Assembly (NCBI RefSeq): GCF_001194135.2
Contig: NC_068981.1
Location: 89,089,315 to 89,130,204, forward strand
Reading direction: 5' to 3'
Source of the DNA: Octopus bimaculoides
Taxonomy: Eukaryota
DNA: 40,890 nt
Each line of letters begins with the position of its first letter. The stretch's first letter is position 1. The notes below the pieces were generated by a model. The model was given only the letters and a program-made list of their open reading frames with translations, did no database searches and was not told where the DNA came from. Shown here piece by piece: positions 3,000 through 37,699 of the stretch. The position numbers and the translations under genes are program-made.

Positions 3000-3710
3000 T
3001 ATTAAAATTTTCTCTTCTCCATTTTTAACTGTTAGTTGTTTTTTTTTATATAGGTTTTGTTCCAAGTATCCCAATACTGAGTTCGCGAAAGCTGGAACAA
3101 ATCGCGTCTCCACAGCTGTGCCTCGAATTTGGATGTAGTTTTTTTTCCGTTGAAAAGGAATGTATTGTTCTCGAGGATGCGACTGACCACGTCTAGAATG
3201 ATGGTTAGAGTAAATCTACTATGGATCACTTCTCTATGTTTCTCGATCCAATATTTTATCGCAGTAATTCCCAAATCGTGTGGAATGTTCGTATTTAACT
3301 TTGTTACATCAAAACTAGGAGTGAATTAGATTCCATTTTTGAGCAGATGTGACAGGAAATCGATGTCATCCCGAATGAAACTGGGTGTGACTACGTAGTG
3401 GTTTTATGATAATATCAGTGAGGTTGCTTAGACGATTCTTGGGTGTCTTAGTGGTCTCGTGGGTAGAGACATAATTAGACAGCCACGTTGAACATCCTGG
3501 GGAGGTTCAATCCTATCCAGGGCCTGCTGCTCAGACGATGTGTAGGATAGGCTGGACCAGCTTTAATAGGTCTTAGTTTAAGATCCTTTGCTTGTAGTAG
3601 CTTTATGTATTCACTAACTTGTAGCTCTATAGCATTTTGCATTTCTTTTGACTTGTGTATTTTAGGTAAGCCATAGAAGTTGCTGGATTTCGATTCAAAG
3701 CTGACCAGTC
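3000..3710 (-). mobile_element. Penelope-like element reverse transcriptase, degenerate
   Basis: Minus-strand translation with frameshifts: SNFYGLPKIHK...DLKLRPIKAGPAYPTHRLS[insert]NLTDIIIKPL...SFIRDDIDFL...SFDVTKLNTNIPHDLGITAIKYW...ILENNTFLFNGK-YIQIRGTAMETRFVPAFANSVLGYLEQ. These are the PLE RT motifs FYGLPKIHK, RPI, FDV.LYTNIP and GTAMG..AP.FAN. Confidence 0.92.
3437..3528 (+). mobile_element. 92-nt tRNA-like (Pol III A/B-box) insertion with 11-bp TSD
   Basis: Flanked by gcttagacgat (3426-3436) and gctcagacgat (3529-3539). A-box-like tgtcttagtgg at 3444-3454 and B-box-like ggttcaatcc at 3504-3513. Removing it restores the PLE frame PTHRLS-NLTDII. Confidence 0.6.
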
Positions 3711-4097: not shown

Positions 4098-4744
4098 ACA
4101 TATATATGTATATAAAATCAAAATGAGCTACATGATTTCAAGTAGAAATGCAGTACGACCCTTTCAAGGGGATCCATTTAATTGAACAAAGCAATCATTA
4201 CATCAATTTAAATACATCGCTATCTTCAGCAGCACAAAAAAATATGGAACTTCAACAGGTAAGATACATTAATATAAGTTTTCTGAAATATTTNNNNNNN
4301 NNNNNNNNNNNNNNNNNNNNNNNNNNNNNNNNNNNNNNNNNNNNNNNNNNNNNNNNNNNNNNNNNNNNNNNNNNNNNNNNNNNNNNNNNNNNNNNNNNNN
4401 NNNNNNNNNNNNNNNNNNNNNNNNNNNNNNNNNNNNNNNNNNNNNNNNNNNNNNNNNNNNNNNNNNNNNNNNNNNNNNNNNNNNNNNNATATATATGTAC
4501 ATATATATGTATATATATATGTATACACACAGACACACACACACACACACATATATATGTATATAAAATCAAAATGAGCTACATGATTTCAAGTAGAAAT
4601 GCAGTACGACCCTTTCAAGGGGATCCATTTAATTGAACAAAGCAATCATTACATCAATTTAAATACATCGCTATCTTCAGCAGCACAAAAAAATATGGAA
4701 CTTCAACAGGTAAGATACATTAATATAAGTTTTCTGAAATATTT
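4098..4744. other. Identical 196-bp duplication either side of an N-gap (4098-4293 = 4549-4744); probable assembly artefact
   Basis: The copies are identical on reading, differ only in the upstream microsatellite, and flank gap 4294-4488. Confidence 0.8.
4605..4709 (+). CDS. Candidate internal exon (duplicated at 4154-4258)
   Basis: Only one frame is open through a strong donor CAG|gtaaga: YDPFKGIHLIEQSNHYINLNTSLSSAAQKNMELQQ. The acceptor is weak. Confidence 0.25.
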
Positions 4745-19260: not shown

Positions 19261-19354
19261 GGGATACGTTACTGACAGAATTCTGCACGAAATTAGTCAT
19301 ATAGTGTAAGTCTTTCGTGATTCAAAGAACACGTATCACAACATAAGAACATTC

Positions 19355-19752
19355 GATGGCGATACCTGCTCGGTGACATACGCAAAGATGCAGAAAGTGT
19401 ATGGACATGAGTGTATGAACCGCACACAAGTGTACGAGAAGTTCAGACGTTTCGAAGATGGCTGAAAAATTGTCGATATTGACGAACGTTCTGGGAGACC
19501 CGCAACCAACAGAACCAGCGTGCGTGCAGCTGTTAGAGGAAATCGTCGATATTGAAGAGTTGTAGGCCTGTGAGTTATCAGAAGATGTGCAAATAAGTTA
19601 CGGTTCAGTTCAGTCCATTATCACTAAAATTTGGTTATGAGACGCGTGTCTGCTAAGTTTGTGTCAAAACTTCTCTCCGCTGACCAAGAAGACACTCGGG
19701 TTTCAGTTACACAAGATCTCCTTGATTGTGTCGAGAACGGGGAAAACTTTTA
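19355..19752 (+). mobile_element. Mariner transposase N-terminal fragment (pseudogene)
   Basis: TYAKMQKVYGHECMNRTQVYEKFRRFEDG*KIVDIDERSGRP...LSEDVQISYGSVQSIITK-LVMRRVSAKFVSKLLSADQEDTRVSVTQDLL: two HTH regions, the RSGRP linker and a WVP(K/H)EL-equivalent motif. No catalytic domain visible. Confidence 0.92.
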
Positions 19753-21663
19753 CATCTATGGTTTAATGTATGTATGTATGTATCTTTAGTGTGGACAGTG
19801 CTTCTGTGTATGTATGTATGCGCGTCTGGAAGTAAATATGAGTGTTTGCATATGTATGTGCTTGTATATTTATCTGTATATGTGTTTGTATGTGTATGCG
19901 ATTGCATTCTTTTAATGTCTACACACATGTAAAACTCGACCTCTGATCTTATGCTTATATGCATTGGTTTCTTATTAATTCTAAGTGGTTCAAATTTTTA
20001 ATTAATTTGTTGCTTTTATTATCAAAAATACTTCATATTCCATCAGATATAACTCAGTCACATCAAAGTAAAAGCACAAAGACATCAACATATATATGAT
20101 CGAATAACACACTTTTGGTGTTATTACTATTTCCTAATTATTTTATTGATTGTTTTACCTCAATTATATTTTCAATCACAAATGTATCAACTTGAAAACA
20201 AACATTAAGATATTGACATACTAAAATATTCTTCCCGAATATTTTGGATGAAATTTCTGTGTAGTTAACTTCCATTTAGTCTAGTTATTCACTGCTTGCT
20301 TTGCAATTTCGTAAGTGATTCTATTTCAACACTGTTGTAAAGTAAGTGGTATCACATAAAGATTCAAATTAAGAATTTTTGAAGATTTTTCGATCAGTTC
20401 AAATGTTTGGGTCATACATGACTTGGAAAAAGAATCTTGCTTTAGGCAGTTTGCTATGAAAAAAGAATATTGCTCTAGGCAAAAGATGTTCAGCGCTACA
20501 GCCATTTTAGCGCATCCCACCCCGCCCTACCACTATGGAGTACTATATGCATTTAAAACTCCTTATGCTTTCATCATTATTAGATGCCAAGCAGGACAGT
20601 TGCGAAATGAGTGGAAGCTTTCGCTTATTTATAAGAAATCAATAGAAATCTCACAAAAGAGAAACTCGCAGCGTTAGACCAAAATATATGATTGGTACGA
20701 GAAGCATTGTTGTGAAACTCTTCGGACATTTCAAATACGTTTGGTAATATATTTGAGCAATAAAAATGCCATTTTTACTGCGGTTTGCTACGCGGAAAAT
20801 TTTCCCTTGAGGTAAAAGCTGTAAAACAAGAAAGTAATTTTCAAGCGGCCCCTATCGATTAATATATGTATTTCGTGCTCTTTATGCTCGCAGTAGATCA
20901 TTTCTATGGACTTTTTAAAAGCTAGGAAATTCTTCCAGTCATTTGTAGATATCTCGCTTGGTATCTAATGCTCATGAGCGCATAATGAGCTCGGAGTGTA
21001 AATATATTCCATGGGTGCGTCACGAAATGGGTTTAGTATTTTATACCTTACAACTAAAACTAGAATTTTCCATTGCAGACAACAATGAAAATGACCTCTT
21101 TTATAAGTCAAACATGTCCTAAACATGTTTGAACTGATCGAAATCTTTGTATATTTCACTACATTGTTTTGCACGCCAACAATGTATTTAAAGATTTCTT
21201 TTCTGTTCCGGTTTGATGCTTCATGCATCTTTCAGGCGTATCTTTAGTAAGACAATTTTAGAGTATTTTTACATATTGTTGCCGATACACACTTCTACTT
21301 CAGATGAAAGAATGTTGAAATGAAAGCAAATAAAAAAACAAAAAACAAAAAAAAAACAAGAAACAAAATCAAAAGCTAATCCACAGTGATTAGTGTAGAA
21401 AGACAATGCTGACATACGATAAGCCAATACATTGACTTCAGGTGAAATCATGCGACCAACATTGACTAAAATCATTTCAGAATTTGAATGGAATATTGAA
21501 TCTGATATTGACAGATTGAGATCGCTTTACGACACTTGACCGTCTCTACGGCGATCACACCTAGTAAGAAAGGTTTGTACTTGATACGCTTGAGGTACCA
21601 AATTCGAATGTCACAAAAGGAGTTGTAAGGCGAAAGGCGTGCGTTGTAATATATTTGTCATAT

Positions 21664-21998
21664 TCCGACGAGGTTGGCGTTGCCTTTCATCATTTCGGGG
21701 TCGATAAATTAAGTACCAGTTGCGTACTGGGTCGATCTAACCGACTGGCCTACTCCCCAAAAATTTCGGGCCTTGTGCTTAGAGTAGAAAAGATTATTAT
21801 TCTTAAAATAAAGCGGTGAGTTGGCAGAAACGTTAGCACGCCGTGGGAAATGCTTAGCGGTATTTCGTCTGTCTTAGCGTTCTGTCTTCAAATTCCGCCG
21901 AGGTCAATTTGCCTTTCATCCTTTCGGGGTCAATAAATTAAGTACCAATTGCGTACTGGGGTCGATCTAAGTTCGGTCCTTGTGCCTAGAGTAGAAAA
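21664..21998 (+). mobile_element. Head-to-tail SINE pair (5'-truncated unit plus near-full unit) within a 17-bp TSD
   Basis: TSD taatatatttgtcatat at 21647-21663 and 21999-22015. Both units carry cctttcatc(a/c)tttcggggtc(g/a)ataaattaagtacca. Confidence 0.92.
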
Positions 21999-23978: not shown

Positions 23979-24411
23979 AAAAACCTGGAAAAATTAGGGT
24001 TCTCAAAACCTGAAAGAAAAAGGCTGATTAGAAGACTACAGATTCAAGCCATCAACGGAACAGTAAAGATATGTAAAACTTTCTAAAAATTTAGCACATA
24101 AATACATATGCAAGCATCTAGACATGAAAAGATATACATAAAAACGTATGCATAAAACAAACATACAAATCTGCACATAAATACATATGCATACGCCTAG
24201 ACATGAAAATATATACATAAAAACGCATCCATAAAACAAACATACAAATCTGCGCATACACTAACACCAAATACTGCACACAAACACACACACACATGCA
24301 CAAATACCTAGATGATGTCGATAAAAGTTCCAATGAAGGAGCCTTGAATCTATGTTAGAGTCCGGCTCTTTCTCTATTGACAAGAAATACAGAAATGAAA
24401 CTGATTGATAA
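23979..24411 (+). mobile_element. RLE-type (R4/Dong-like) LINE, 5'-truncated 3' end, family 'TACA'
   Basis: NLEKLGFSKPERKRLIRRLQIQAINGTVKICKTF, homologous to the 28422 copy, followed by a 3' UTR. Both ends abut (ATAC)n. Confidence 0.88.
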
Positions 24412-25014
24412 CATACATGCATGCATACATACATACATACATACATACATACATACATAATCGATTCTCTCGTCACGAATGACAAATGAAAGCTCAGTAA
24501 AATAGAACAGTGATTATGTACTATGGACAAGAGTGTGTCTCTTGAGGCCTGCTGGTACTTTGTAAACCTTCTGGGCAAATGGACAAGTTGAGGACTCAGT
24601 TTACTCGAATGCATGTGGATCATTTTGTTGAGTGGACAAGGCCTACTTTGCACCGTACCACAAATTTCGGTTGCATCTTGGATATATATATATATATATA
24701 TTTGAAAACATACTCATAATTGTGGAAGGACTATACTCCTGTATATGTACATATATGCATATAAATCTCTAAACGTGTGTCTCACTGATCTCCCTCTTCC
24801 AATCTCACCCCGTCTTCGTTTGTACGTCGGTCACTCCTCTCATTCATCATATATTTCTTTGCTTACATGTCTTAGTTTCAATCAATCACTTTTAAAATGT
24901 ATTGTTGCTAACACTTTATTGACAAAACTCTATTCTGGCATTAACAGTTATTTTCTCATGTGGAATCATTATTATAATCATCAATATGTTGCCTTACTTA
25001 ACATATTATATGCA

Positions 25015-28421: not shown

Positions 28422-29299
28422 AATCCAGAAACAGGAAATATCAACCAAGCACCTGATGCACAAAAGGGATAGAGATGCAGGAAAAGCAGTAAAATGTGAC
28501 AACCGAAGCAGACTTTGTGGTGTTAACATCGAAGATATCCCCACACCATAAGCAGTTCTCCGCAGATGTTATCACCGTATTATCTACCTATGAGACATGA
28601 TATTGTAACTAGGACACTTTATAAGGAAATCCGTAGGAAGGATAATCCCGAGGACAAAGAAATAAGAACCCACAGTTCGGCAGACGCCATAGCCACTCAT
28701 AATAAAAAGGAATATTGGTGGAATGTCCCAGTGAAAACCTCAATAAAATGAAAGGACAACAGACTTGATACAATGATTTGGAATATAGAAGTGAAACTGT
28801 GCACAGATGTGAAAATTAGCTTTCAAGCAGATGATGTTAACATATAGCTGAAGATGTTAACATAAAGCTGAACTATTGAGAAATCTGCTATTACTCTATC
28901 CAGATTACAAATTCAGGTTCATATCTGTAATTATTGAGGCCCTGGGATATATAACACACTGCCTAAATACCAATCTTGAGAAATTAGGCTTCTCAAAACC
29001 AGAAAGGAGAAAGCCAATTCGAAGACTACAGTTCCAATCCATCAGTGGAACTGTAAAAATCTGAAAAATTTTCCAGAGGTTTATCATTTAAGCATATATG
29101 ACCATGTCTAGATGTGCAACTATGTGTATGACAATACAAACATAAGGCAAAACATACAAATCTGAACAAATGCATCCATCCATCCATACATACATACATA
29201 TATAAAAACAAAAATACCCTGTTGTTGTCTAGGTTAGAAACTGGGTCTTTTTCTTTTGGCAAGAAATCTTGAAATAAAACTGAACAATATCATGCATAC
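28422..29299 (+). mobile_element. RLE-type LINE 3' portion (zinc knuckle plus restriction-like endonuclease), family 'TACA'
   Basis: ...DNRSRLCGVNIEDI-H...-YYLPMRHDIV...WWNVPVKTSIK*KDNRLDTMIWNIEVKLCT...LRNLLLLYPDYKFRFISVIIEALG...NLEKLGFSKPERRK: degenerate CCHC knuckle, RHD and PD-D region. Preceded by (CATA)n; ends ...ctgaacaatatcatgcatac. Confidence 0.92.
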
Positions 29300-30290: not shown

Positions 30291-30300
30291 ATCGCCTGAA

Positions 30301-30730
30301 ATGCGGTGAGGTGGCAGAAAAGTTAGCACGCCGGGCGAAATTCTTAGCGGTATTTCGTCTGCCGCTACGTTCTGAGTTCAAATTCCGCCGAGGTCGACTT
30401 TACCTTTCATTCTTTCGGGGTCTATAAATTAAGTACCAGTTACGTACTGAGGTCGATGTAATCGACTTAATCCCTTTGTCTGTCCTTGTTTGTCCCCTGT
30501 CTGTTTAGCCCGTTGTGGGCAATAAAGAAATAAGAAATGTTAGCATGCCGGGCGAAATGCTTAGCGGCATTTCGTCTGTCCTCACGTTCTGAACTCTAAT
30601 TCCGTCGTGATCGACTTTGCCTTTCATCTTTTAGGGCTCGATAACATAAGTACCAGTTGAGTCCTGGAGTCGATGTAATCCACTTATTCCTCTCCGAATT
30701 TGCTGGCCTTGTGCCAGAATTTGAAATCAG
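30301..30730 (+). mobile_element. Tandem SINE pair with two different 3' tails
   Basis: Unit 1 at 30301-~30533; unit 2 restarts at agaaatgttagcatgccgggcgaaatg. Confidence 0.92.
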
Positions 30731-31956
30731 TATACTAGAATCTTTATGGTCCCCTATACGTATCTCATAAAATTATAACTAACTTTGAGACAAACTATGA
30801 AGTAAACGCTTAGATGCAAAATTTTGCAAACGTAAGTATTTTAACGCGTCGTCAGTTAAAAAATATAAACTGGGACGGCTTGCCAATAACAACAAATTTC
30901 TCCGGATTCATTGGTTATTTATTTTCTGGTATATTTCCCGAAATTTAAGAGAAATATAAATCCACCTAGGCAAGGTAAATGTGTATCTATTTCTTTGTTT
31001 CTATTCTTTGATATTACATTACGTGATTTGATGAATTCCTCACGGCATTGTTAAAAGATTTTCAAACATGAAAGAGAATATTTCACGAAATATTATCGGA
31101 TCATTAAACAACCTACATAAGGCAATACACTATCATTTCTCTTTGCTTTCATTTATTGACATCACATTACATACTTTCTCTAATGTGTCACCTACATTGC
31201 CCGAAGGTTTTTCAAATATCTCCTTTAAACTGTATTTACTTAGAGCAACTCCTATAAGCATTTGGAAACACAGAAAGCTTTTAATACTGATATTTACATA
31301 TGTACTTTGAGGATACAGGTTCAGAAAAATCTATTTCGTCATATACTTGTTCATCTTTTCTTACTTGTTCGTCTTCTCTTGTTCATTTTTTTTCGCTTTG
31401 ATGTTTAAATAGTTGAAGATTGTTTGTAGTATTCATTATTTGTTCTTGTCTATACGATTTTCTTGATACATAACAAATATTTCACTTCCATTTCATCTTC
31501 TTTGTGCTGTATTAACTCAAAGAAACTATGAATAAACAACTTTCATGCATATTAGATCAGGTAGAATTTGGACAACCCCACTATATAGCTGTCACTTTCG
31601 ATAAACTGTTATTGATTTTCGAATATTTTAGCGTAAAGTATAAGATTTTTCAACTTTCAGTATTTTTTTTCCAGTTAAACAGCTTTATAAATATTTCAAA
31701 CATTATTTTCGTAATGAGAATCATATTATTATCCTTATTAATCTACTCTCTTCTCTCCTTTTTGTCAAAATCTTGTTTTTTGATTATCTGTGTACATTAT
31801 ACCGCTTTTAACAATCATAAACTTTCAGTCCTAATTTACGCAGGAAAGGAAATTGATATCTCAAGCAATCAAATGACAACTCAAAGGGATTCAATACAAA
31901 CATAAATACACACACACGTACATATATATATACATATGTATGTATGTATGTATGTA

Positions 31957-32066
31957 GGTCATTATTCAGTTTATTTCATGATGTCTTGCCGATAGAGAAA
32001 ACACCGGTTCCTAACCTAGATGCAAGGCTGCTTCATTGGAATTTTAACATCAACAACAGGATATTT
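31957..32066 (-). mobile_element. RLE-type LINE terminal ~110 bp, family 'TACA'
   Basis: The rc reads aaatatcctgttgttgatgttaaaattccaatgaagcagccttgcatctaggttaggaaccgg...gaaataaactgaataatgac, homologous to 24302-24411 and 29212-29290. Embedded in (TATG)n. Confidence 0.85.
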
Positions 32067-33324
32067 GTGTATGTATGTATGTATGTATGTATGTATGTAT
32101 GTATTATGTATGTATGTGTGTATGTATGTATGTATGTATGTATGTATGTATGTATGCATGTATGTATAACGAGTTTCTTGGTAGTCACCAGTTTTTCTAC
32201 AACAGTTATAGTAGTTGAAATAATTGTATTTTAAGGCTGCTTATTTTACATTCATTTATGAGTGTATATTTTAATTGTCTTGAGTGAAAGTTGCGATATC
32301 AATAAGTATTATCTCTCAAGTTAATATGTACGTCATGTTAGCATAAGTCTTGTACGGACGCTAATGTACACCTTTACGTCTTATGAAATGTATGTCGAAG
32401 ATCGTGTCCTTATTCTGTACAGCTATAAAAAAACAAAAAAAACAAAAAAAAAAAAAACGCTACAGATTATTAAACAGAATTAAACATGTTAAACATGTTG
32501 GGAAGAATTGAAGAAAGATGAAATATCATTTTATATATTTTATTACAATACATTATTACATATATTATTTTTCTAGCTAATTTTTTCTTTTGGCTCAACT
32601 TATGAAACACGATAACCAAAATAGGTGTCAGACTTTTAAAGAGTATTTCTCATGGTAGTAACCATTACTCTGGATTTGAGTGACGTGGATTAATTTAGAC
32701 AACCACAGACACTAAAGTTTTCCCCAAAATCCAGGGTTTTTATAACTGCTAAACTTGACTTTCAAGAATAGAAATTTCATAAAAATATTCTTTTACTAAT
32801 TCTTGGAATTCAAATATGAGCAGTTATTTCAACCAATGGGAAAACAACAATCATATCTCCTCGGCAATACAACATTACGTCATATTGCCGGCTGTTATGA
32901 ATTTCGCGCCACGCTACATATGTATGTTTGTATGTATGTAAAACGTAAAATGAAAACAGAACACAAAGGATTCCGCGGTACACGCGTTTCAAGCTTTATA
33001 CACAACCAGTCGTTGCATCATTATATGAGTATATAATTGATAGAAAGGATGGTTTAAAGCTATATTCAGCCGCAAACATTTTCAGTCCCAAGATTACATC
33101 ACAAAGATAAAAATCACAAATAAAAAAGAAAAAGAGAGAGAAAAAGGAAAAGTCCATTTAGTATTATCCATTGTAATATGCTTATCTTTTAAATTGTTAT
33201 ATCTACATAAAAATCCCTTGGTATTCAAAAATCTGTCCATATTGTACCACAATTCAAGGTAGAGTGAATGATAAAGAAATATAACTAGCGCATATGGGAT
33301 AGGAGAAGATAATAAAAAAATCCT

Positions 33325-33960
33325 CCTTCTGTGGGTGGTTCTGCATTTGGGGATCAATTTTGTCTCTGCCAGACCTAGCCAGTGTGGTATGCTACTGTTC
33401 CCAATGAAAGTTTGCTGGTACAGACTAATAAGGTATGATCGGTAGAACGTTAGCATCTTGTACCAATATCCAACAATCAAGTCTCTTCCAGGTGCTTTTC
33501 CATCCTGGAGTTTCTGGATCACAGTTGCAATGTTATATGTCTTGGATGTAACGTAGGAGCAATAACTTTTTCGGATTTCTTCCAGCCACAGATCATCTTG
33601 GTTAAATTCCTTCTCTTCACTCCAGATTTTCCACCAGAAGGAGTCTATGTCTTCTCGTGAAGGAGCTTCCGTGATATTTATTGCTCCTCCTCTCATGTCT
33701 CTGTATACTGCTGCCTTGTTGTGGTTAATTTTTTTTGTTTATTTTCTTCTCACGGTTATTCTCTTCTGATGTCGGAGTTTTGCACTGACAGCTCTTATCT
33801 CCTGCATTAGTAGTTTGAAAGTGAGTGACCCCTTTTTGCTGTCTCCAAACATCATTTCTATCTCCTTTACTTTCTATTGGTAGGACGTATAGTGATTTGC
33901 TTGTTTGCATGCAATAAGCATCATTACATGACTGATGGTCTTCTGTAACCCAGTTATCTT
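33325..33960 (-). mobile_element. RLE-type (R4/Dong-like) LINE, pre-RT and RT N-terminal fragment
   Basis: ...AVSAKLRHQKR...NKK-TTNKAAVYRDMRG...PSREDIDSFWWKIWS...IQKLQDGKAPGRDLIVGYWYKML...IPHWLGLAETKLIPK: KAPG.D.I..FW.K and P.WL...T.LIPK motifs. Confidence 0.9.
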
Positions 33961-33991: not shown

Positions 33992-34409
33992 GAAAGAAAG
34001 AAAATGAAGAAACATGGATGCATGAATAATTTATTCGTATGATATACGATGTTGAAATTTTAAAAACATAGTCTTTCTTGGAAGGATGCATACAGATGCA
34101 TCTTTCCATGAAAATTGTTAACCTTAGCTCATAATAACTCATAATAAGCTAATAAAAACCCCGAAGGAGTTCTGCCCCATATAGTTAAAAATGATACCAT
34201 TCTCAGCATATAACCAAATGCTTAGAATTGCATATCGACTAGGGGATAAAACTGAAGTATATATGTAGGTTTTTTCGCATCTCCCATTTTCTTTTTCAGC
34301 TTTACAACTTATAATTTATCTGCATTGTTATTGTTTTTAAAATTTCAACGTCTTTATATCATACAAATAAAATATTCATACATCCATCTTTCTCCATTTT
34401 CTTTCTTTC
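33992..34409. mobile_element. Foldback/MITE-like element with ~78-bp terminal inverted repeats
   Basis: 33992-34068 is the reverse complement of 34332-34409 with about 8 differences. The right end runs into a gap. Confidence 0.6.
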
Positions 34410-34954
34410 NNNNNNNNNNNNNNNNNNNNNNNNNNNNNNNNNNNNNNNNNNNNNNNNNNNNNNNNNNNNNNNNNNNNNNNNNNNNNNNNNNNNNNNNNNN
34501 NNNNNNNNNNNNNNNNNNNNNNNNNNNNNNNNNNNNNNNNNNNNNNNNNNNNNNNNNNNNNNNNNNNNNNNNNNNNNNNNNNNNNNNNNNNNNNNNNNNN
34601 NNNNNNNNNNNNNNNNNNNNNNNNNNNNNNNNNNNNNNNNNNNNNNNNNNNNNNNNNNNNNNNNNNNNNNNNNNNNNNNNNNNNNNNNNNNNNNNNNNNN
34701 NNNNNNNNNNNNNNNNNNNNNNNNNNNNNNNNNNNNNTATATATATAAGCAGTTATAATGATAGTTACAATAGCTAGTCTGCTTCGCCATAACATTCTCC
34801 AATGCTTTTTCCAGTTAACATGATGAATAAATCTTTATGCTAAAAAACAAGTGGAGAAATTAGGCATTTCTCATATTAGAAATAATAAACTATAATTCGG
34901 AATACCATAGTATAATATTATATATGAAAAAAATAGTATAATATAATATATAAT

Positions 34955-36106: not shown

Positions 36107-36175
<69 letters not shown>

Positions 36176-36302
36176 AGAAGAAGAACAGAGCTGGAGTTCA
36201 AAATTCATAACTGCCCTTTTGACAACATTTTATTGCAGCATTCTTAGGTTACATCTTGGCAAAAATCCGCCATTTTCAGGTAAATTTTAAACATGTAGGC
36301 TG

Positions 36303-36395
36303 GTAAGACAGAAATAGAGGTTACTAGTTCACCAAGAGTTATGCCTTGTTTCATTGTGGCTGTTGGTGAACTAGTCGCCTCTATTTCTGCCTTAT
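36303..36395 (+). ncRNA. Candidate pri-miRNA hairpin
   Basis: 36304-36343 pairs with 36355-36394 without bulges: 32 Watson-Crick pairs, 5 G-U, 3 mismatches; 11-nt loop containing UGU. Not matched to any miRNA I recognise. Confidence 0.45.
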
Positions 36396-36414
36396 ATACA
36401 TACATACATACCTG

Positions 36415-36462
<48 letters not shown>

Positions 36463-37699
36463 CATATAGTCTGAGTATCCATATGCACTCGTATATTTGT
36501 CACTATAGTGGGGATTTTAGTCAAAGTGTACAGTAATATATAACTCTTACGGTTTTGCACTGTTGAAGTGGATGCTAGATAACAGTATGTTTATGTAATA
36601 CTGCGTGCTGGTAAGATCTGCCAGGTATGGAAACAATCTTATTGGATAAACAAATACATCCGATGCGGGGACGCTGTGAAGAAGACGAAATGAAGTAAAA
36701 TTTATATCAATAGTTATAGCTTTCGGTTTCAAATTAGAAATGCATGTGTGTGTGTGTGAAGGGGGTTAGTAGTTGGGATTCTTGCAGGTTATGTAGGGTC
36801 GGAATGTAATAGGGTTAATATATGTAAAGAGTTGGTGGGAAGAGGATGCTGGGCGGGTGTCCGAACGCTTTTTTCCATTTTTAATGAGATGTTTCTGCGT
36901 GATCTTTTGTGCATGTTTTGGTTAAACACTTAGCTGGGTTCATATGGTATGGTGGAGAAAGGGTCGAAGGTAGATGACTGGTAATTATAGTCATGATGGG
37001 GTCCATAATTACAATAAAATAACATTCTTTCATGTGGGCAAGGGCTAAAAATCTCATTTCTCCAGCTTAGGTAGATTATGTCTGTACCGAGATTTTTAAT
37101 ATTGTTATTTTCTCGGCTAAGCATACTCTTCATTTTTTCTTGCTACTAAATTAAGACTTGCACTTCTTTCCCACTTTATGGTGTACTCCATAACATCTTC
37201 CTTTAAAGACGATACGCGTCTGACCAGCGCAGTGGTATTTCGTCTCCCTTAATATACATATCCTTACTGACAAGACATAAAGCATACAAAATCAAATAGT
37301 TCCATGCATGCAAGGCTTCTTACAAATAGACGCACCAAAACATACAAAAAAGTTCATTCCCACAACGACAGAAATACTGAAGCGAAAGCGCTAGCCATCC
37401 TTTTAAATATAGAGAATCGCGTGACCACCTCGCCATGCGACCACCCCATATCACGCCAATGAACTGAAATGCTGCACTGTAAATATTACTGTACTCAGTG
37501 AGGTGAGACCAATTTTTTTGAAGGTTCTCTTAATAAGGTTAGTGACAGTTGTATCTTCTAGCATTGTCCTCACTAACCATGTCGTATCTCGTTCTTAGTG
37601 TCCATCTGATAGTGTGAACAATGACCGTTTCTATTACACATTAGATCAGGCACTGACTACTAGCTTTAAAATACTAAAGTAATATTTGAAAAAAGCTTT

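What the first reader, a model, noticed from the sequence alone, without database searches (positions are those of the whole stretch)
36303..36395. Near-perfect hairpin with pri-miRNA hallmarks: candidate novel microRNA
Seen: a 40-position bulge-free stem in unique sequence between microsatellites. Five of the eight non-Watson-Crick positions are G-U on the + strand and would be A-C on the minus strand, which suggests selection at the RNA level. There is a basal UG at 36301-36302 and an apical UGU in the 11-nt loop, but no CNNC at the expected 3' position. Microprocessor geometry predicts approximately 5p UAGAGGUUACUAGUUCACCAAG (36315-36336) and 3p UGGUGAACUAGUCGCCUCUAUU (36364-36385); the ~71-nt precursor would be somewhat long. 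Established: coleoid cephalopods have many lineage-specific miRNA families. I do not recognise this sequence, and it may already be annotated. A MITE-derived palindrome is the main alternative.
Basis: partly seen in the sequence, partly recalled or inferred. Interest (0 to 1): 0.7.

Follow-up and report, generated by a model that had tools for sequence, protein, structure and literature searches.

The report
Lone stable hairpin, unproven microRNA
A real and very stable 93-base hairpin lies in repeat-rich non-coding DNA, but only its shape suggests a microRNA gene, and it fits a small transposon-type or replication-made DNA palindrome at least as well.

Summary
The hairpin at 36303-36395 is exactly as described. 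It has 40 stem positions (32 Watson-Crick, 5 G-U, 3 mismatches), no bulges and an 11-13 nt loop. Its MFE is -56.9 kcal/mol (z = -9.9), the most stable 100-nt fold in the window, and it occurs once in the window.

The microRNA arguments do not exceed chance:
- The + strand has a basal UG but no CNNC, no mGHG, a UGU about 10 nt from its canonical place, and a stem 5-6 bp too long.
- Measured the same way, the - strand has a canonical CNNC at +16, a 35-position stem and a 21-nt loop.
- The + strand is 4.1 kcal/mol more stable than the - strand; 61% of neutral-decay simulations give a gap at least that large. The G-U excess is matched in 5%.

At DNA level it is a 35-bp inverted repeat (31/35 complementary) around a 21-bp spacer, bounded by TA...TA. 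This is the layout of the Made1 MITE, the source of mir-548.

No Rfam family matches, and the held octopus miRNA target-site tables contain no matching seed. Copy number, conservation, expression and the source organism could not be tested.

Best reading: a non-genic DNA palindrome (MITE or template-switch origin). I put a true miRNA at about 0.07. Interest is low.

The parts
36303..36395 (+). RNA-level hairpin as described: a 40-41 position stem without bulges and an 11-13 nt loop
36304..36338 (.). Left arm of the DNA-level inverted repeat. It is 35 bp, and 31 of 35 positions are complementary to the right arm.
36339..36359 (.). 21-bp spacer of the DNA palindrome. On the + strand only, its ends add 2 more pairs and 4 G-U pairs, which lengthens the stem to 40-41 positions.
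36360..36394 (.). Right arm of the DNA-level inverted repeat
36304..36305 (.). TA at the outer edge of the left arm. It could be half of a Tc1/mariner-type TA target-site duplication, or simply the last two palindromic pairs.
36393..36394 (.). TA at the outer edge of the right arm, the partner of 36304-36305
36301..36302 (+). UG at -14/-13 of the predicted + strand 5p Drosha cut. The chance frequency of UG in this window is 6.8%.
36295..36298 (-). CNNC (CUAC) starting at +16 from the Drosha 3p cut predicted on the - strand with the same ruler. The chance of a CNNC starting at +16 to +18 is about 9%.
36315..36336 (+). It is hypothetical, with no read evidence.
36364..36385 (+). It has U at positions 1 and 9. 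It is hypothetical, with no read evidence.
36396..36466 (.). Compound microsatellite (ATAC)n(AC)n(AT)n directly abutting the right end of the palindrome

Best explanation
This is a non-genic DNA palindrome: two 35-bp inverted arms (36304-36338 and 36360-36394, 31/35 complementary) around a 21-bp spacer. It sits in repeat- and microsatellite-rich non-coding DNA.

It was most likely made by a DNA-level event, not shaped by selection on an RNA. I consider two origins.

(a) Somewhat favoured: a miniature inverted-repeat element of the Tc1/mariner type, with two terminal inverted repeats collapsed onto a short core and inserted at a TA. This is the architecture of human Made1.

(b) A template-switch mutation during replication that copied the neighbouring sequence in inverted orientation.

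Since then the arms have drifted apart by about 11%.

Shown: the structure, its exceptional stability, its single occurrence in the window, the TA...TA boundary, and the chance-level status of the miRNA motifs.

Inferred: the origin and the lack of a dedicated function.

If the locus is transcribed, either strand would fold into a 35-40 bp duplex. That duplex would be a passive substrate for dsRNA enzymes (ADAR, Dicer). It would be a sub-optimal Microprocessor substrate on the + strand. There the basal ruler places the cut at 36314|36315, while about 22 bp measured from the apical junction places it near 36321|36322.
For: Structure and uniqueness.

Both strands fold almost equally well (-56.9 and -53.0 kcal/mol), as expected of a DNA palindrome. 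In 61% of neutral-decay simulations the stability gap between strands is at least as large as observed.

Within the 35-bp arms the four differences are 2 transition-type and 2 transversion-type. One gives a G-U on each strand, so the arms show no strand bias.

The outermost DNA-level pairs are TA/TA. The 87-91 bp size and the layout of arms plus short core match Made1, which is 80 bp with 2 x 37-bp TIRs and a 6-bp core, is mariner-derived and forms 'highly stable hairpin loops' (PMC1784062).

A decayed Mos1/mariner transposase relic lies in the same window (HTH_48, E = 4e-5). If the genome is an octopus, Tc1-Mariner is its largest TIR superfamily, at 119 Mb in 362 families (PMC13282606).

Template switching made more than 6,000 miRNA-like hairpins in primates, of which at least 18 became miRNA genes (PMC10710096).

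The pri-miRNA motifs are at chance level, one per strand.

No Rfam family matches. The held rows of the O. vulgaris conserved target-site tables (2,937 mentions of Ovu miRNA names in Data S3) contain no site for the predicted seeds at registers -1, 0 or +1.
Against: No second copy was found anywhere, so MITE status is unproven. The window is too small to expect one, and the collections searched hold no animal genomes.

The arm termini (TA|AGACAG...) do not show the terminal motifs I know for Tc1, pogo or mariner (CAG..., YYAGGT...; from my own knowledge). They do not resemble the mariner relic in the window, which has no detectable TIRs.

TA is itself palindromic, so TA...TA may simply be the end of the palindrome.

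Four G-U pairs extend the stem on the + strand only. The overall 6:1 G-U versus A.C split is matched in only 5% of neutral simulations, a faint hint of RNA-level constraint.

The basal UG is in the canonical place. Both predicted arms start with U, the 3p also has U at position 9, and the duplex has the typical 19 pairs.
Confidence: 0.6

Rival explanations
1. A bona fide canonical microRNA gene on the + strand. It is cut by Drosha at 36314|36315 and about 36385|36386, then by Dicer, giving roughly UAGAGGUUACUAGUUCACCAAG and UGGUGAACUAGUCGCCUCUAUU. It would be lineage- or species-specific.
For: The hairpin is stable and discrete. UG sits at -14/-13. The duplex has 19 pairs, equal to the MirGeneDB mean of 19 +/- 1.6. 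The 71-nt precursor is under the <80 nt limit seen in molluscs. Both arms start with U and the 3p has U at position 9. There is a G-U excess on the + strand. Octopus miRNA counts are said to be an underestimate that misses species-specific genes (PMC9699675).
Against: The stem is 40-41 bp against about 35. The inter-arm loop would be 27 nt against a median of 15-16. There is no CNNC at +16 to +18 and no mGHG: the A.C mismatch is at -7/+5, not -6/+4. The UGU is at +33, not at the apical junction about 22 nt from the cut. The - strand scores equally well. The G-U bias is not significant. No Rfam family matches. The held part of the O. vulgaris target-site tables has no matching seed site. The base rate is about 0.3% of suitable hairpins. 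No expression or conservation data exist.
Confidence: 0.07
2. A long-hairpin dsRNA element that matters as dsRNA and not as a miRNA. It could be a source of endogenous siRNAs (hpRNA-like, from either strand). It could also be an ADAR editing or dsRNA-binding site within an intron or UTR of a host transcript.
For: The duplex is 35-40 bp and nearly perfect on both strands, longer than Microprocessor prefers. In octopus, hairpins in introns and 3'UTRs are described as the ADAR substrates where most A-to-I editing occurs (PMC9699675). Made1 hairpins are transcribed from both strands by read-through (PMC1784062).
Against: There is no evidence that the locus is transcribed. No exon, Pfam domain or host gene was recognisable in the flanks. 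Being a substrate does not make it functional.
Confidence: 0.1
3. A 3'-tailed mirtron. The hairpin starts exactly with GUAAGA (36303-36308), a good 5' splice-site match. Splicing, not Drosha, would then define the 5' end.
For: GUAAGA is preceded by G at the first paired base. A YAG acceptor-like 'uuuucag' lies 24 nt upstream at 36273-36279.
Against: There is no AG at or near the 3' end of the hairpin; the next AG after 36374 is at about 36468. No exon is recognisable. At 93 nt the hairpin would be far longer than known mirtron hairpins (my own knowledge). GUAAG occurs by chance about once per kb at this base composition.
Confidence: 0.01
4. An assembly artefact, that is, a fold-back chimera created during sequencing or scaffolding of a gap-rich draft.
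For: The window has 13 N-gaps. It also has at least one gap-flanking exact duplication, 4098-4293 = 4549-4744.
Against: Artefactual fold-backs are perfect palindromes. This one has 4 arm differences and a 21-bp asymmetric spacer, and it lies about 200 bp from the nearest gap.
Confidence: 0.03

Closest known systems
Made1 MITE / hsa-mir-548 family (human; PMC1784062)
   Same: Both are short, near-perfect DNA palindromes. This element is 87-91 bp with 35-bp arms and a short core; Made1 is 80 bp with 2 x 37-bp TIRs and a 6-bp core. A TA sits at both ends. The fold is a very stable hairpin on either strand. Mariner-type transposase remains lie nearby in the same genome window.
   Different: There is no sequence similarity. 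Copy number is unknown here, whereas Made1 has many paralogues. The spacer is 21 bp, not 6. No parent element with matching TIRs was identified. No small RNAs are known.
Template-switch-mutation hairpins that seed de novo miRNAs (PMC10710096)
   Same: An inverted repeat in otherwise unique sequence that forms a complete hairpin, apparently single-copy locally. This is the kind of raw material from which a small minority become miRNA genes.
   Different: The origin by template switching cannot be shown without an outgroup sequence lacking one arm. The arms have already diverged by about 11%.
Canonical bilaterian pri-miRNA (Microprocessor substrate; PMC6298569, MirGeneDB 3.0 PMC11701709)
   Same: A stem-loop with single-stranded flanks, a basal UG at -14/-13, a 19-pair duplex, arms that can be 22 nt, and a loop of at least 8 nt.
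   Different: The stem is 40-41 bp, not about 35. There is no CNNC and no mGHG, and the UGU is not at the apical junction. The pre-miRNA loop would be 27 nt against a median of 15-16. There is no read, conservation or family evidence.
Octopus/coleoid novel miRNA families (Zolotarov et al. 2022, PMC9699675; MirGeneDB)
   Same: If the window is from an octopod, this would be the class the candidate belongs to: lineage-restricted hairpins not found in miRBase or Rfam.
   Different: Those families were accepted only with small-RNA reads and presence in two octopus species. The held target-site tables contain no site for this hairpin's predicted seeds. The MirGeneDB sequences themselves were not available for comparison.

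Membership tests
Animal miRNA gene (MirGeneDB / Microprocessor criteria) | Hairpin with at least 16 complementary nucleotides between the two 20-26 nt arms, and a loop of at least 8 nt | tested here: met
   19 of 20 duplex positions pair (18 Watson-Crick + 1 G-U), and the apical loop is 11-13 nt. The MirGeneDB mean is 19 +/- 1.6.
Animal miRNA gene (MirGeneDB / Microprocessor criteria) | Reads of about 22 nt from both arms with 2-nt 3' offsets and homogeneous 5' ends | not testable with these tools
   No small-RNA data are reachable.
Animal miRNA gene (MirGeneDB / Microprocessor criteria) | Stem of about 35 bp (about 11 bp lower plus about 22 bp upper) with an unstructured apical loop of at least 10 nt | tested here: not met
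   The + strand stem has 40-41 positions, so the basal and apical rulers disagree by 6-7 bp. The - strand would meet the criterion, with 35 positions and a 21-nt loop.
Animal miRNA gene (MirGeneDB / Microprocessor criteria) | Basal UG at -14/-13 | tested here: met
   UG at 36301-36302 on the + strand, where the chance frequency is 6.8%. The - strand has UA.
Animal miRNA gene (MirGeneDB / Microprocessor criteria) | CNNC starting 16-18 nt downstream of the 3p cut (present in about 60% of pri-miRNAs) | tested here: not met
   On the + strand CNNC starts only at +2 and +27. The - strand has one at +16.
Animal miRNA gene (MirGeneDB / Microprocessor criteria) | Apical UGU(G) at the stem-loop junction and a mismatched GHG (CmR) at -6/+4 | tested here: not met
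   The UGU at 36347-36349 is +33 from the predicted cut. Positions -7 to -5 read ACA and +3 to +5 read UGC. The A.C mismatch lies at -7/+5.
Animal miRNA gene (MirGeneDB / Microprocessor criteria) | Conservation of the locus in at least two species, with arms more conserved than the loop | not testable with these tools
   No animal genome collection is available. The DNA and translated-ORF searches returned nothing, and the calibration queries were also empty.
Known miRNA family (Rfam 15) | Score at or above a family's gathering threshold | tested here: not met
   The whole window has 0 hits at gathering. The best hits on the hairpin are mir-335 at 19.6 bits (gathering score 64) and MIR7996 at 21.1 bits (gathering score 119).
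Annotated Octopus vulgaris miRNA (Zolotarov 2022) | Seed of either predicted arm (registers -1, 0, +1) listed among the miRNA target-site k-mers | tested here: inconclusive
   None of the six site 7-mers appears next to an Ovu miRNA in Data S2 or S3. However, both files were cut when stored, and the source species of the window is unverified.
MITE (Tc1/mariner-type) | Terminal inverted repeats, small size, no coding capacity | tested here: met
   The arms are 35 bp with 31/35 complementary, the total is 87-91 bp, and there is no Pfam signal in or around it.
MITE (Tc1/mariner-type) | TA target-site duplication flanking the TIRs | tested here: inconclusive
   TA is present at 36304-36305 and 36393-36394. 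TA is self-complementary, so it cannot be told apart from the last two pairs of the palindrome.
MITE (Tc1/mariner-type) | Many dispersed copies in the genome, with empty sites | not testable with these tools
   There is one copy in 40.9 kb, and no genome of the source organism is reachable.
MITE (Tc1/mariner-type) | TIRs matching an autonomous element | tested here: not met
   There is no similarity to the mariner relic at about 19.3-19.8 kb, which has lost its TIRs. Only this one candidate parent could be examined.
Template-switch-generated hairpin | Outgroup or ancestral sequence has one arm only, and the second arm is an inverted copy of adjacent sequence | not testable with these tools
   No outgroup sequence is available.
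Mirtron | Hairpin ends coincide with the 5' GU and 3' AG splice sites of a short intron | tested here: not met
   GUAAGA is present at the 5' end, but there is no AG at the 3' end; the next AG is at about 36468.

The most novel reading that the evidence does not exclude
The hairpin is a very young, species-restricted miRNA, or a hairpin on its way to becoming one, that arose from a MITE or a template-switch palindrome in a cephalopod genome. If so, it would be a caught-in-the-act example of how the large coleoid miRNA expansion draws on new hairpins. The authors of the octopus miRNA study say the source of those novel loci is not known (PMC9699675).
Probability: 0.07. Interest if true: 0.4.

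Novelty: new member of a known kind. Interest (0 to 1): 0.13.

Why it matters
As it stands the finding matters little. Long genomes contain thousands of such palindromic hairpins, and only a fraction of a percent are miRNA genes.

It would matter modestly if small-RNA data showed precise processing. The origin of the many lineage-specific cephalopod miRNAs is an open question, and a young hairpin with a traceable DNA-level origin (MITE or template switch) would be a useful example.

The practical lesson for the scan is about method. pri-miRNA 'hallmarks' and G-U counts should be scored on both strands and against chance before they are counted as evidence.

Tried and rejected
(1) Rfam at gathering threshold on the whole window, and at E <= 10 on 36150-36550. 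Only sub-threshold generic miRNA hits appeared, the strongest of them on the flanking microsatellite.

(2) Search for other copies:
- Within the window, by 22-mer with up to 3 mismatches and by blastn with word size 7: none.
- In the metagenome, prokaryote-genome and viral collections, with the arm consensus ATAGAGGNNACTAGTTCACCAA: none.
- With a gapped palindrome pattern: one metagenome hit (L001). It is an unrelated perfect palindrome at a contig end that shares only the 11-nt core.

(3) 'Protein trick'. The two frames that stay open through the hairpin were aligned (A2) and searched in the 5.8-billion-cluster database and in the 1.84-billion representative library. Both gave 0 hits. Calibration with an ORF from a repeat present twice in the window and with a LINE-like ORF also gave 0. 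These databases therefore do not hold spurious ORFs from this genome, and the negative says nothing about copy number.

(4) The look-up of encoding contigs on three window ORFs: not on record. The source contig and organism could not be identified.

(5) Literature:
- Full-text search for 15-mers of both arms (U and T forms): 0 papers.
- Supplements of Zolotarov 2022 and its preprint: no arm sequence and no seed site beside an Ovu miRNA.
- MirGeneDB 3.0 and MirMachine: no supplements held.

(6) Other TSD types were considered and rejected. For an 8-bp hAT duplication around TAGAG...CTCTA, the flanks are reverse complements, not direct repeats. For a 3-bp TWA duplication, the two sides read TAA and TTA.

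(7) The mariner relic in the window as a parent element: it has no TIRs and no similarity.

(8) Pfam on ten ORFs flanking the hairpin: nothing.

(9) tRNA scan of the window: none.

Full report

Positions 36303-36342 pair with 36395-36356 over 40 consecutive positions without a bulge. There are 32 Watson-Crick pairs, 5 G-U pairs and 3 mismatches (A.C 36308/36390, U.C 36322/36376, G.G 36336/36362). A sixth G-U is possible at 36343/36355, and the loop CCUUGUUUCAU is 11 nt.

The 121-nt + strand folds at -56.9 kcal/mol (z = -9.9), and none of 200 shuffles does as well. The - strand folds at -53.0 (z = -9.0).

I folded every 100-nt window on both strands. This locus is the best in the whole window at -52.6. 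Complex-sequence windows average -14.6 with sd 5.8, and the next unrelated locus scores -37.4. The hairpin survives as a discrete domain in a 361-nt context.

The smaller statements are also right:
- There is a UG at 36301-36302.
- There is a UGU in the loop.
- There is no CNNC at +16 to +18.
- The predicted 5p and 3p products are mutually consistent.
- The sequence is unique between microsatellites.

It is not an assembly fold-back. The arms differ at four positions, the spacer is asymmetric, and the nearest gap is about 200 bp away.

WHAT IT LOOKS LIKE AS DNA

Counting only true complementarity, the palindrome runs from T36304 to A36394. It has two 35-bp arms (31/35 complementary) around a 21-bp spacer.

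The extra length of the + strand stem comes from the spacer ends, where two pairs and four G-U pairs happen to continue the helix. On the - strand these become A.C mismatches, leaving a 35-position stem and a 21-nt loop.

The outermost two pairs are T-A and A-T, so the 87-bp core is bounded by TA...TA.

DO THE miRNA ARGUMENTS EXCEED CHANCE?

1. G-U bias.
- Every transition in a perfect stem gives a G-U on one strand and an A.C on the other with equal probability. A 5:1 or 6:1 split has a two-sided binomial p of 0.22 or 0.125.
- In 3,000 simulations of neutral decay of a perfect 41-bp palindrome, a 6:1 split arose in 5%.
- A stability gap between strands at least as large as the observed 4.1 kcal/mol arose in 61%.
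- Inside the 35-bp arms there is no bias at all, with one G-U on each strand.

2. Hallmark motifs. The determinants are a stem of about 35 bp with a mismatched GHG, a basal UG, an apical UGUG, and a CNNC present in about 60% of pri-miRNAs. Drosha measures about 11 bp from the basal junction (PMC6298569; PMC11701709). I applied the same rulers to both strands.
- + strand: the UG is in place (chance 6.8%). There is no CNNC and no mGHG; the A.C mismatch is one position off, at -7/+5. The UGU is at +33, not about +22, and a UGU somewhere in an 11-nt loop is expected 23% of the time. The stem is 5-6 bp too long, so the basal and apical rulers disagree by 6-7 bp.
- - strand: there is no UG. A CNNC starts at +16 (chance about 9%), and the stem and loop geometry is closer to canonical.
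- One canonical motif on each strand is what chance gives, and it does not identify a transcribed strand.

3. Features that do fit a miRNA.
- The predicted duplex has 19 pairs, against a MirGeneDB mean of 19 +/- 1.6.
- The 71-nt precursor is below the <80 nt limit seen in molluscs, although its 27-nt inter-arm loop exceeds the median of 15-16.
- Both arms start with U, and the 3p has U at position 9.

COMPARISON WITH KNOWN RNAs

No Rfam 15 family reaches threshold anywhere in the window. On the hairpin the best scores are about 20 bits against thresholds of 64-119. MirGeneDB states that its cephalopod annotations are not included in miRBase. Whether Rfam holds any cephalopod-specific family was not checked, so the Rfam result does not settle whether the hairpin is already annotated.

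The supplements of the octopus miRNA study contain no arm sequence. Among the held rows of the conserved target-site tables (2,937 mentions of Ovu miRNA names in Data S3) there is no site for the predicted seeds at registers -1, 0 or +1. This is moderate evidence against an already annotated, conserved octopus miRNA. It is weakened by truncated files and by the unverified source species.

That study accepted novel families only when they were present in two octopus species. It reports 164 and 162 genes, which it calls an underestimate.

ATTEMPTS TO OBTAIN COPY NUMBER OR ORTHOLOGUES FAILED

The DNA collections hold no animal genomes and gave nothing relevant.

I translated the two frames that remain open through the hairpin and searched both protein libraries. 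Both gave 0 hits. Control queries from a repeat present twice in the window and from a LINE-like ORF were equally empty, so these negatives carry no information.

Three window ORFs are not on record in the contig index. I could therefore not verify that the window is cephalopod. It is a 34% GC, gap-rich, microsatellite-rich draft with a mariner relic and several repeat families.

BEST EXPLANATION

The object is most simply a DNA-level palindrome without a dedicated function.

Its layout matches Made1, the 80-bp mariner-derived MITE (2 x 37-bp TIRs plus 6 bp). Made1 folds into very stable hairpins on either strand and gave rise to mir-548 (PMC1784062). The TA...TA boundary fits a Tc1/mariner insertion. 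A Mos1-type transposase relic lies in the window. In O. vulgaris, Tc1-Mariner is the largest TIR superfamily, at 119 Mb (PMC13282606).

Several points count against the MITE reading:
- TA is self-complementary, so the boundary is ambiguous.
- The termini lack the terminal motifs I know for Tc1, pogo or mariner (own knowledge).
- No second copy or parent element was found.

The equally ordinary alternative is a template-switch mutation. In primates these made more than 6,000 miRNA-like hairpins, of which at least 18 (about 0.3%) became miRNA genes (PMC10710096).

Combining such base rates with the mildly favourable features (UG, U-starts, G-U hint) and the unfavourable ones (stem length, no CNNC or mGHG, strand ambiguity), I estimate by inference:
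- non-genic palindrome: about 0.6;
- dsRNA element of some consequence (ADAR or siRNA substrate): about 0.1;
- true miRNA: about 0.07;
- artefact: about 0.03;
- mirtron: about 0.01.

The mirtron idea came from the GUAAGA at exactly the first paired bases. It fails the test for an AG at the 3' end of the hairpin.

VERDICT

This is a real structure of a known and common kind. The miRNA label is unproven and improbable on priors, but it has not been refuted. A genome-wide BLAST and a small-RNA read pile-up would settle it within minutes.

Noticed in passing
window 4098-4293 and 4549-4744: Two 196-nt stretches are 100% identical and lie on either side of the N-gap at 4294-4488. This looks like a gap-flanking duplication left by the scaffolder or gap-closer, not a biological repeat.
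   Followed up: no
window 33992-34068 and 34332-34409: A 78-nt inverted repeat (89.7% identity) whose second arm abuts the N-gap at 34410-34737. It could be a larger fold-back or the TIRs of an element interrupted by the gap.
   Followed up: no
window ~19310-19790 (+): A decayed Mos1/mariner-type transposase relic. The HTH_48 domain scores E = 4e-5, at the Pfam cut-off. A second, frame-shifted piece at 19628-19786 resembles a mariner transposase by eye. The relic is truncated by a microsatellite and has no detectable TIRs.
   Followed up: partly
window 21658-21970 and 30300-30714: A dispersed non-coding repeat family (72-86% identity) with an internal duplication of roughly 220 nt in each copy, probably a SINE-like or satellite-like element. 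An ORF through it has no match in the protein database.
   Followed up: partly
window 23982-24447, 28972-29209, 31923-32155: Three copies (71-74% identity, one inverted) of what looks like the 3' end of a LINE. Each lies next to (ATAC/GTAT)-type microsatellites.
   Followed up: no
window 3035-3325 (-), 3478-3708 (-), 33097-33738 (-): Open frames that look reverse-transcriptase-related by eye ('YGLPKIHK', 'APGRDLIVGYWYK'). They have no Pfam hit and no homologue at E <= 0.001 in the large protein database, so their identity is unconfirmed.
   Followed up: partly
window 36273-36308: A splice-acceptor-like 'uuuucag' (36273-36279) is followed 23 nt later by a donor-like G|GUAAGA exactly at the first paired base of the hairpin. 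This is probably chance in AT-rich DNA, but it is the only hint of a transcript structure near the hairpin.
   Followed up: partly
L001 1540-1653 (metagenome contig Ga0172379_10156978): A perfect palindrome of more than 100 nt running to the end of a 1,653-nt metagenome contig. It shares only an 11-nt core with the hairpin and is likely an assembly fold-back or a hairpin end of some replicon.
   Followed up: no
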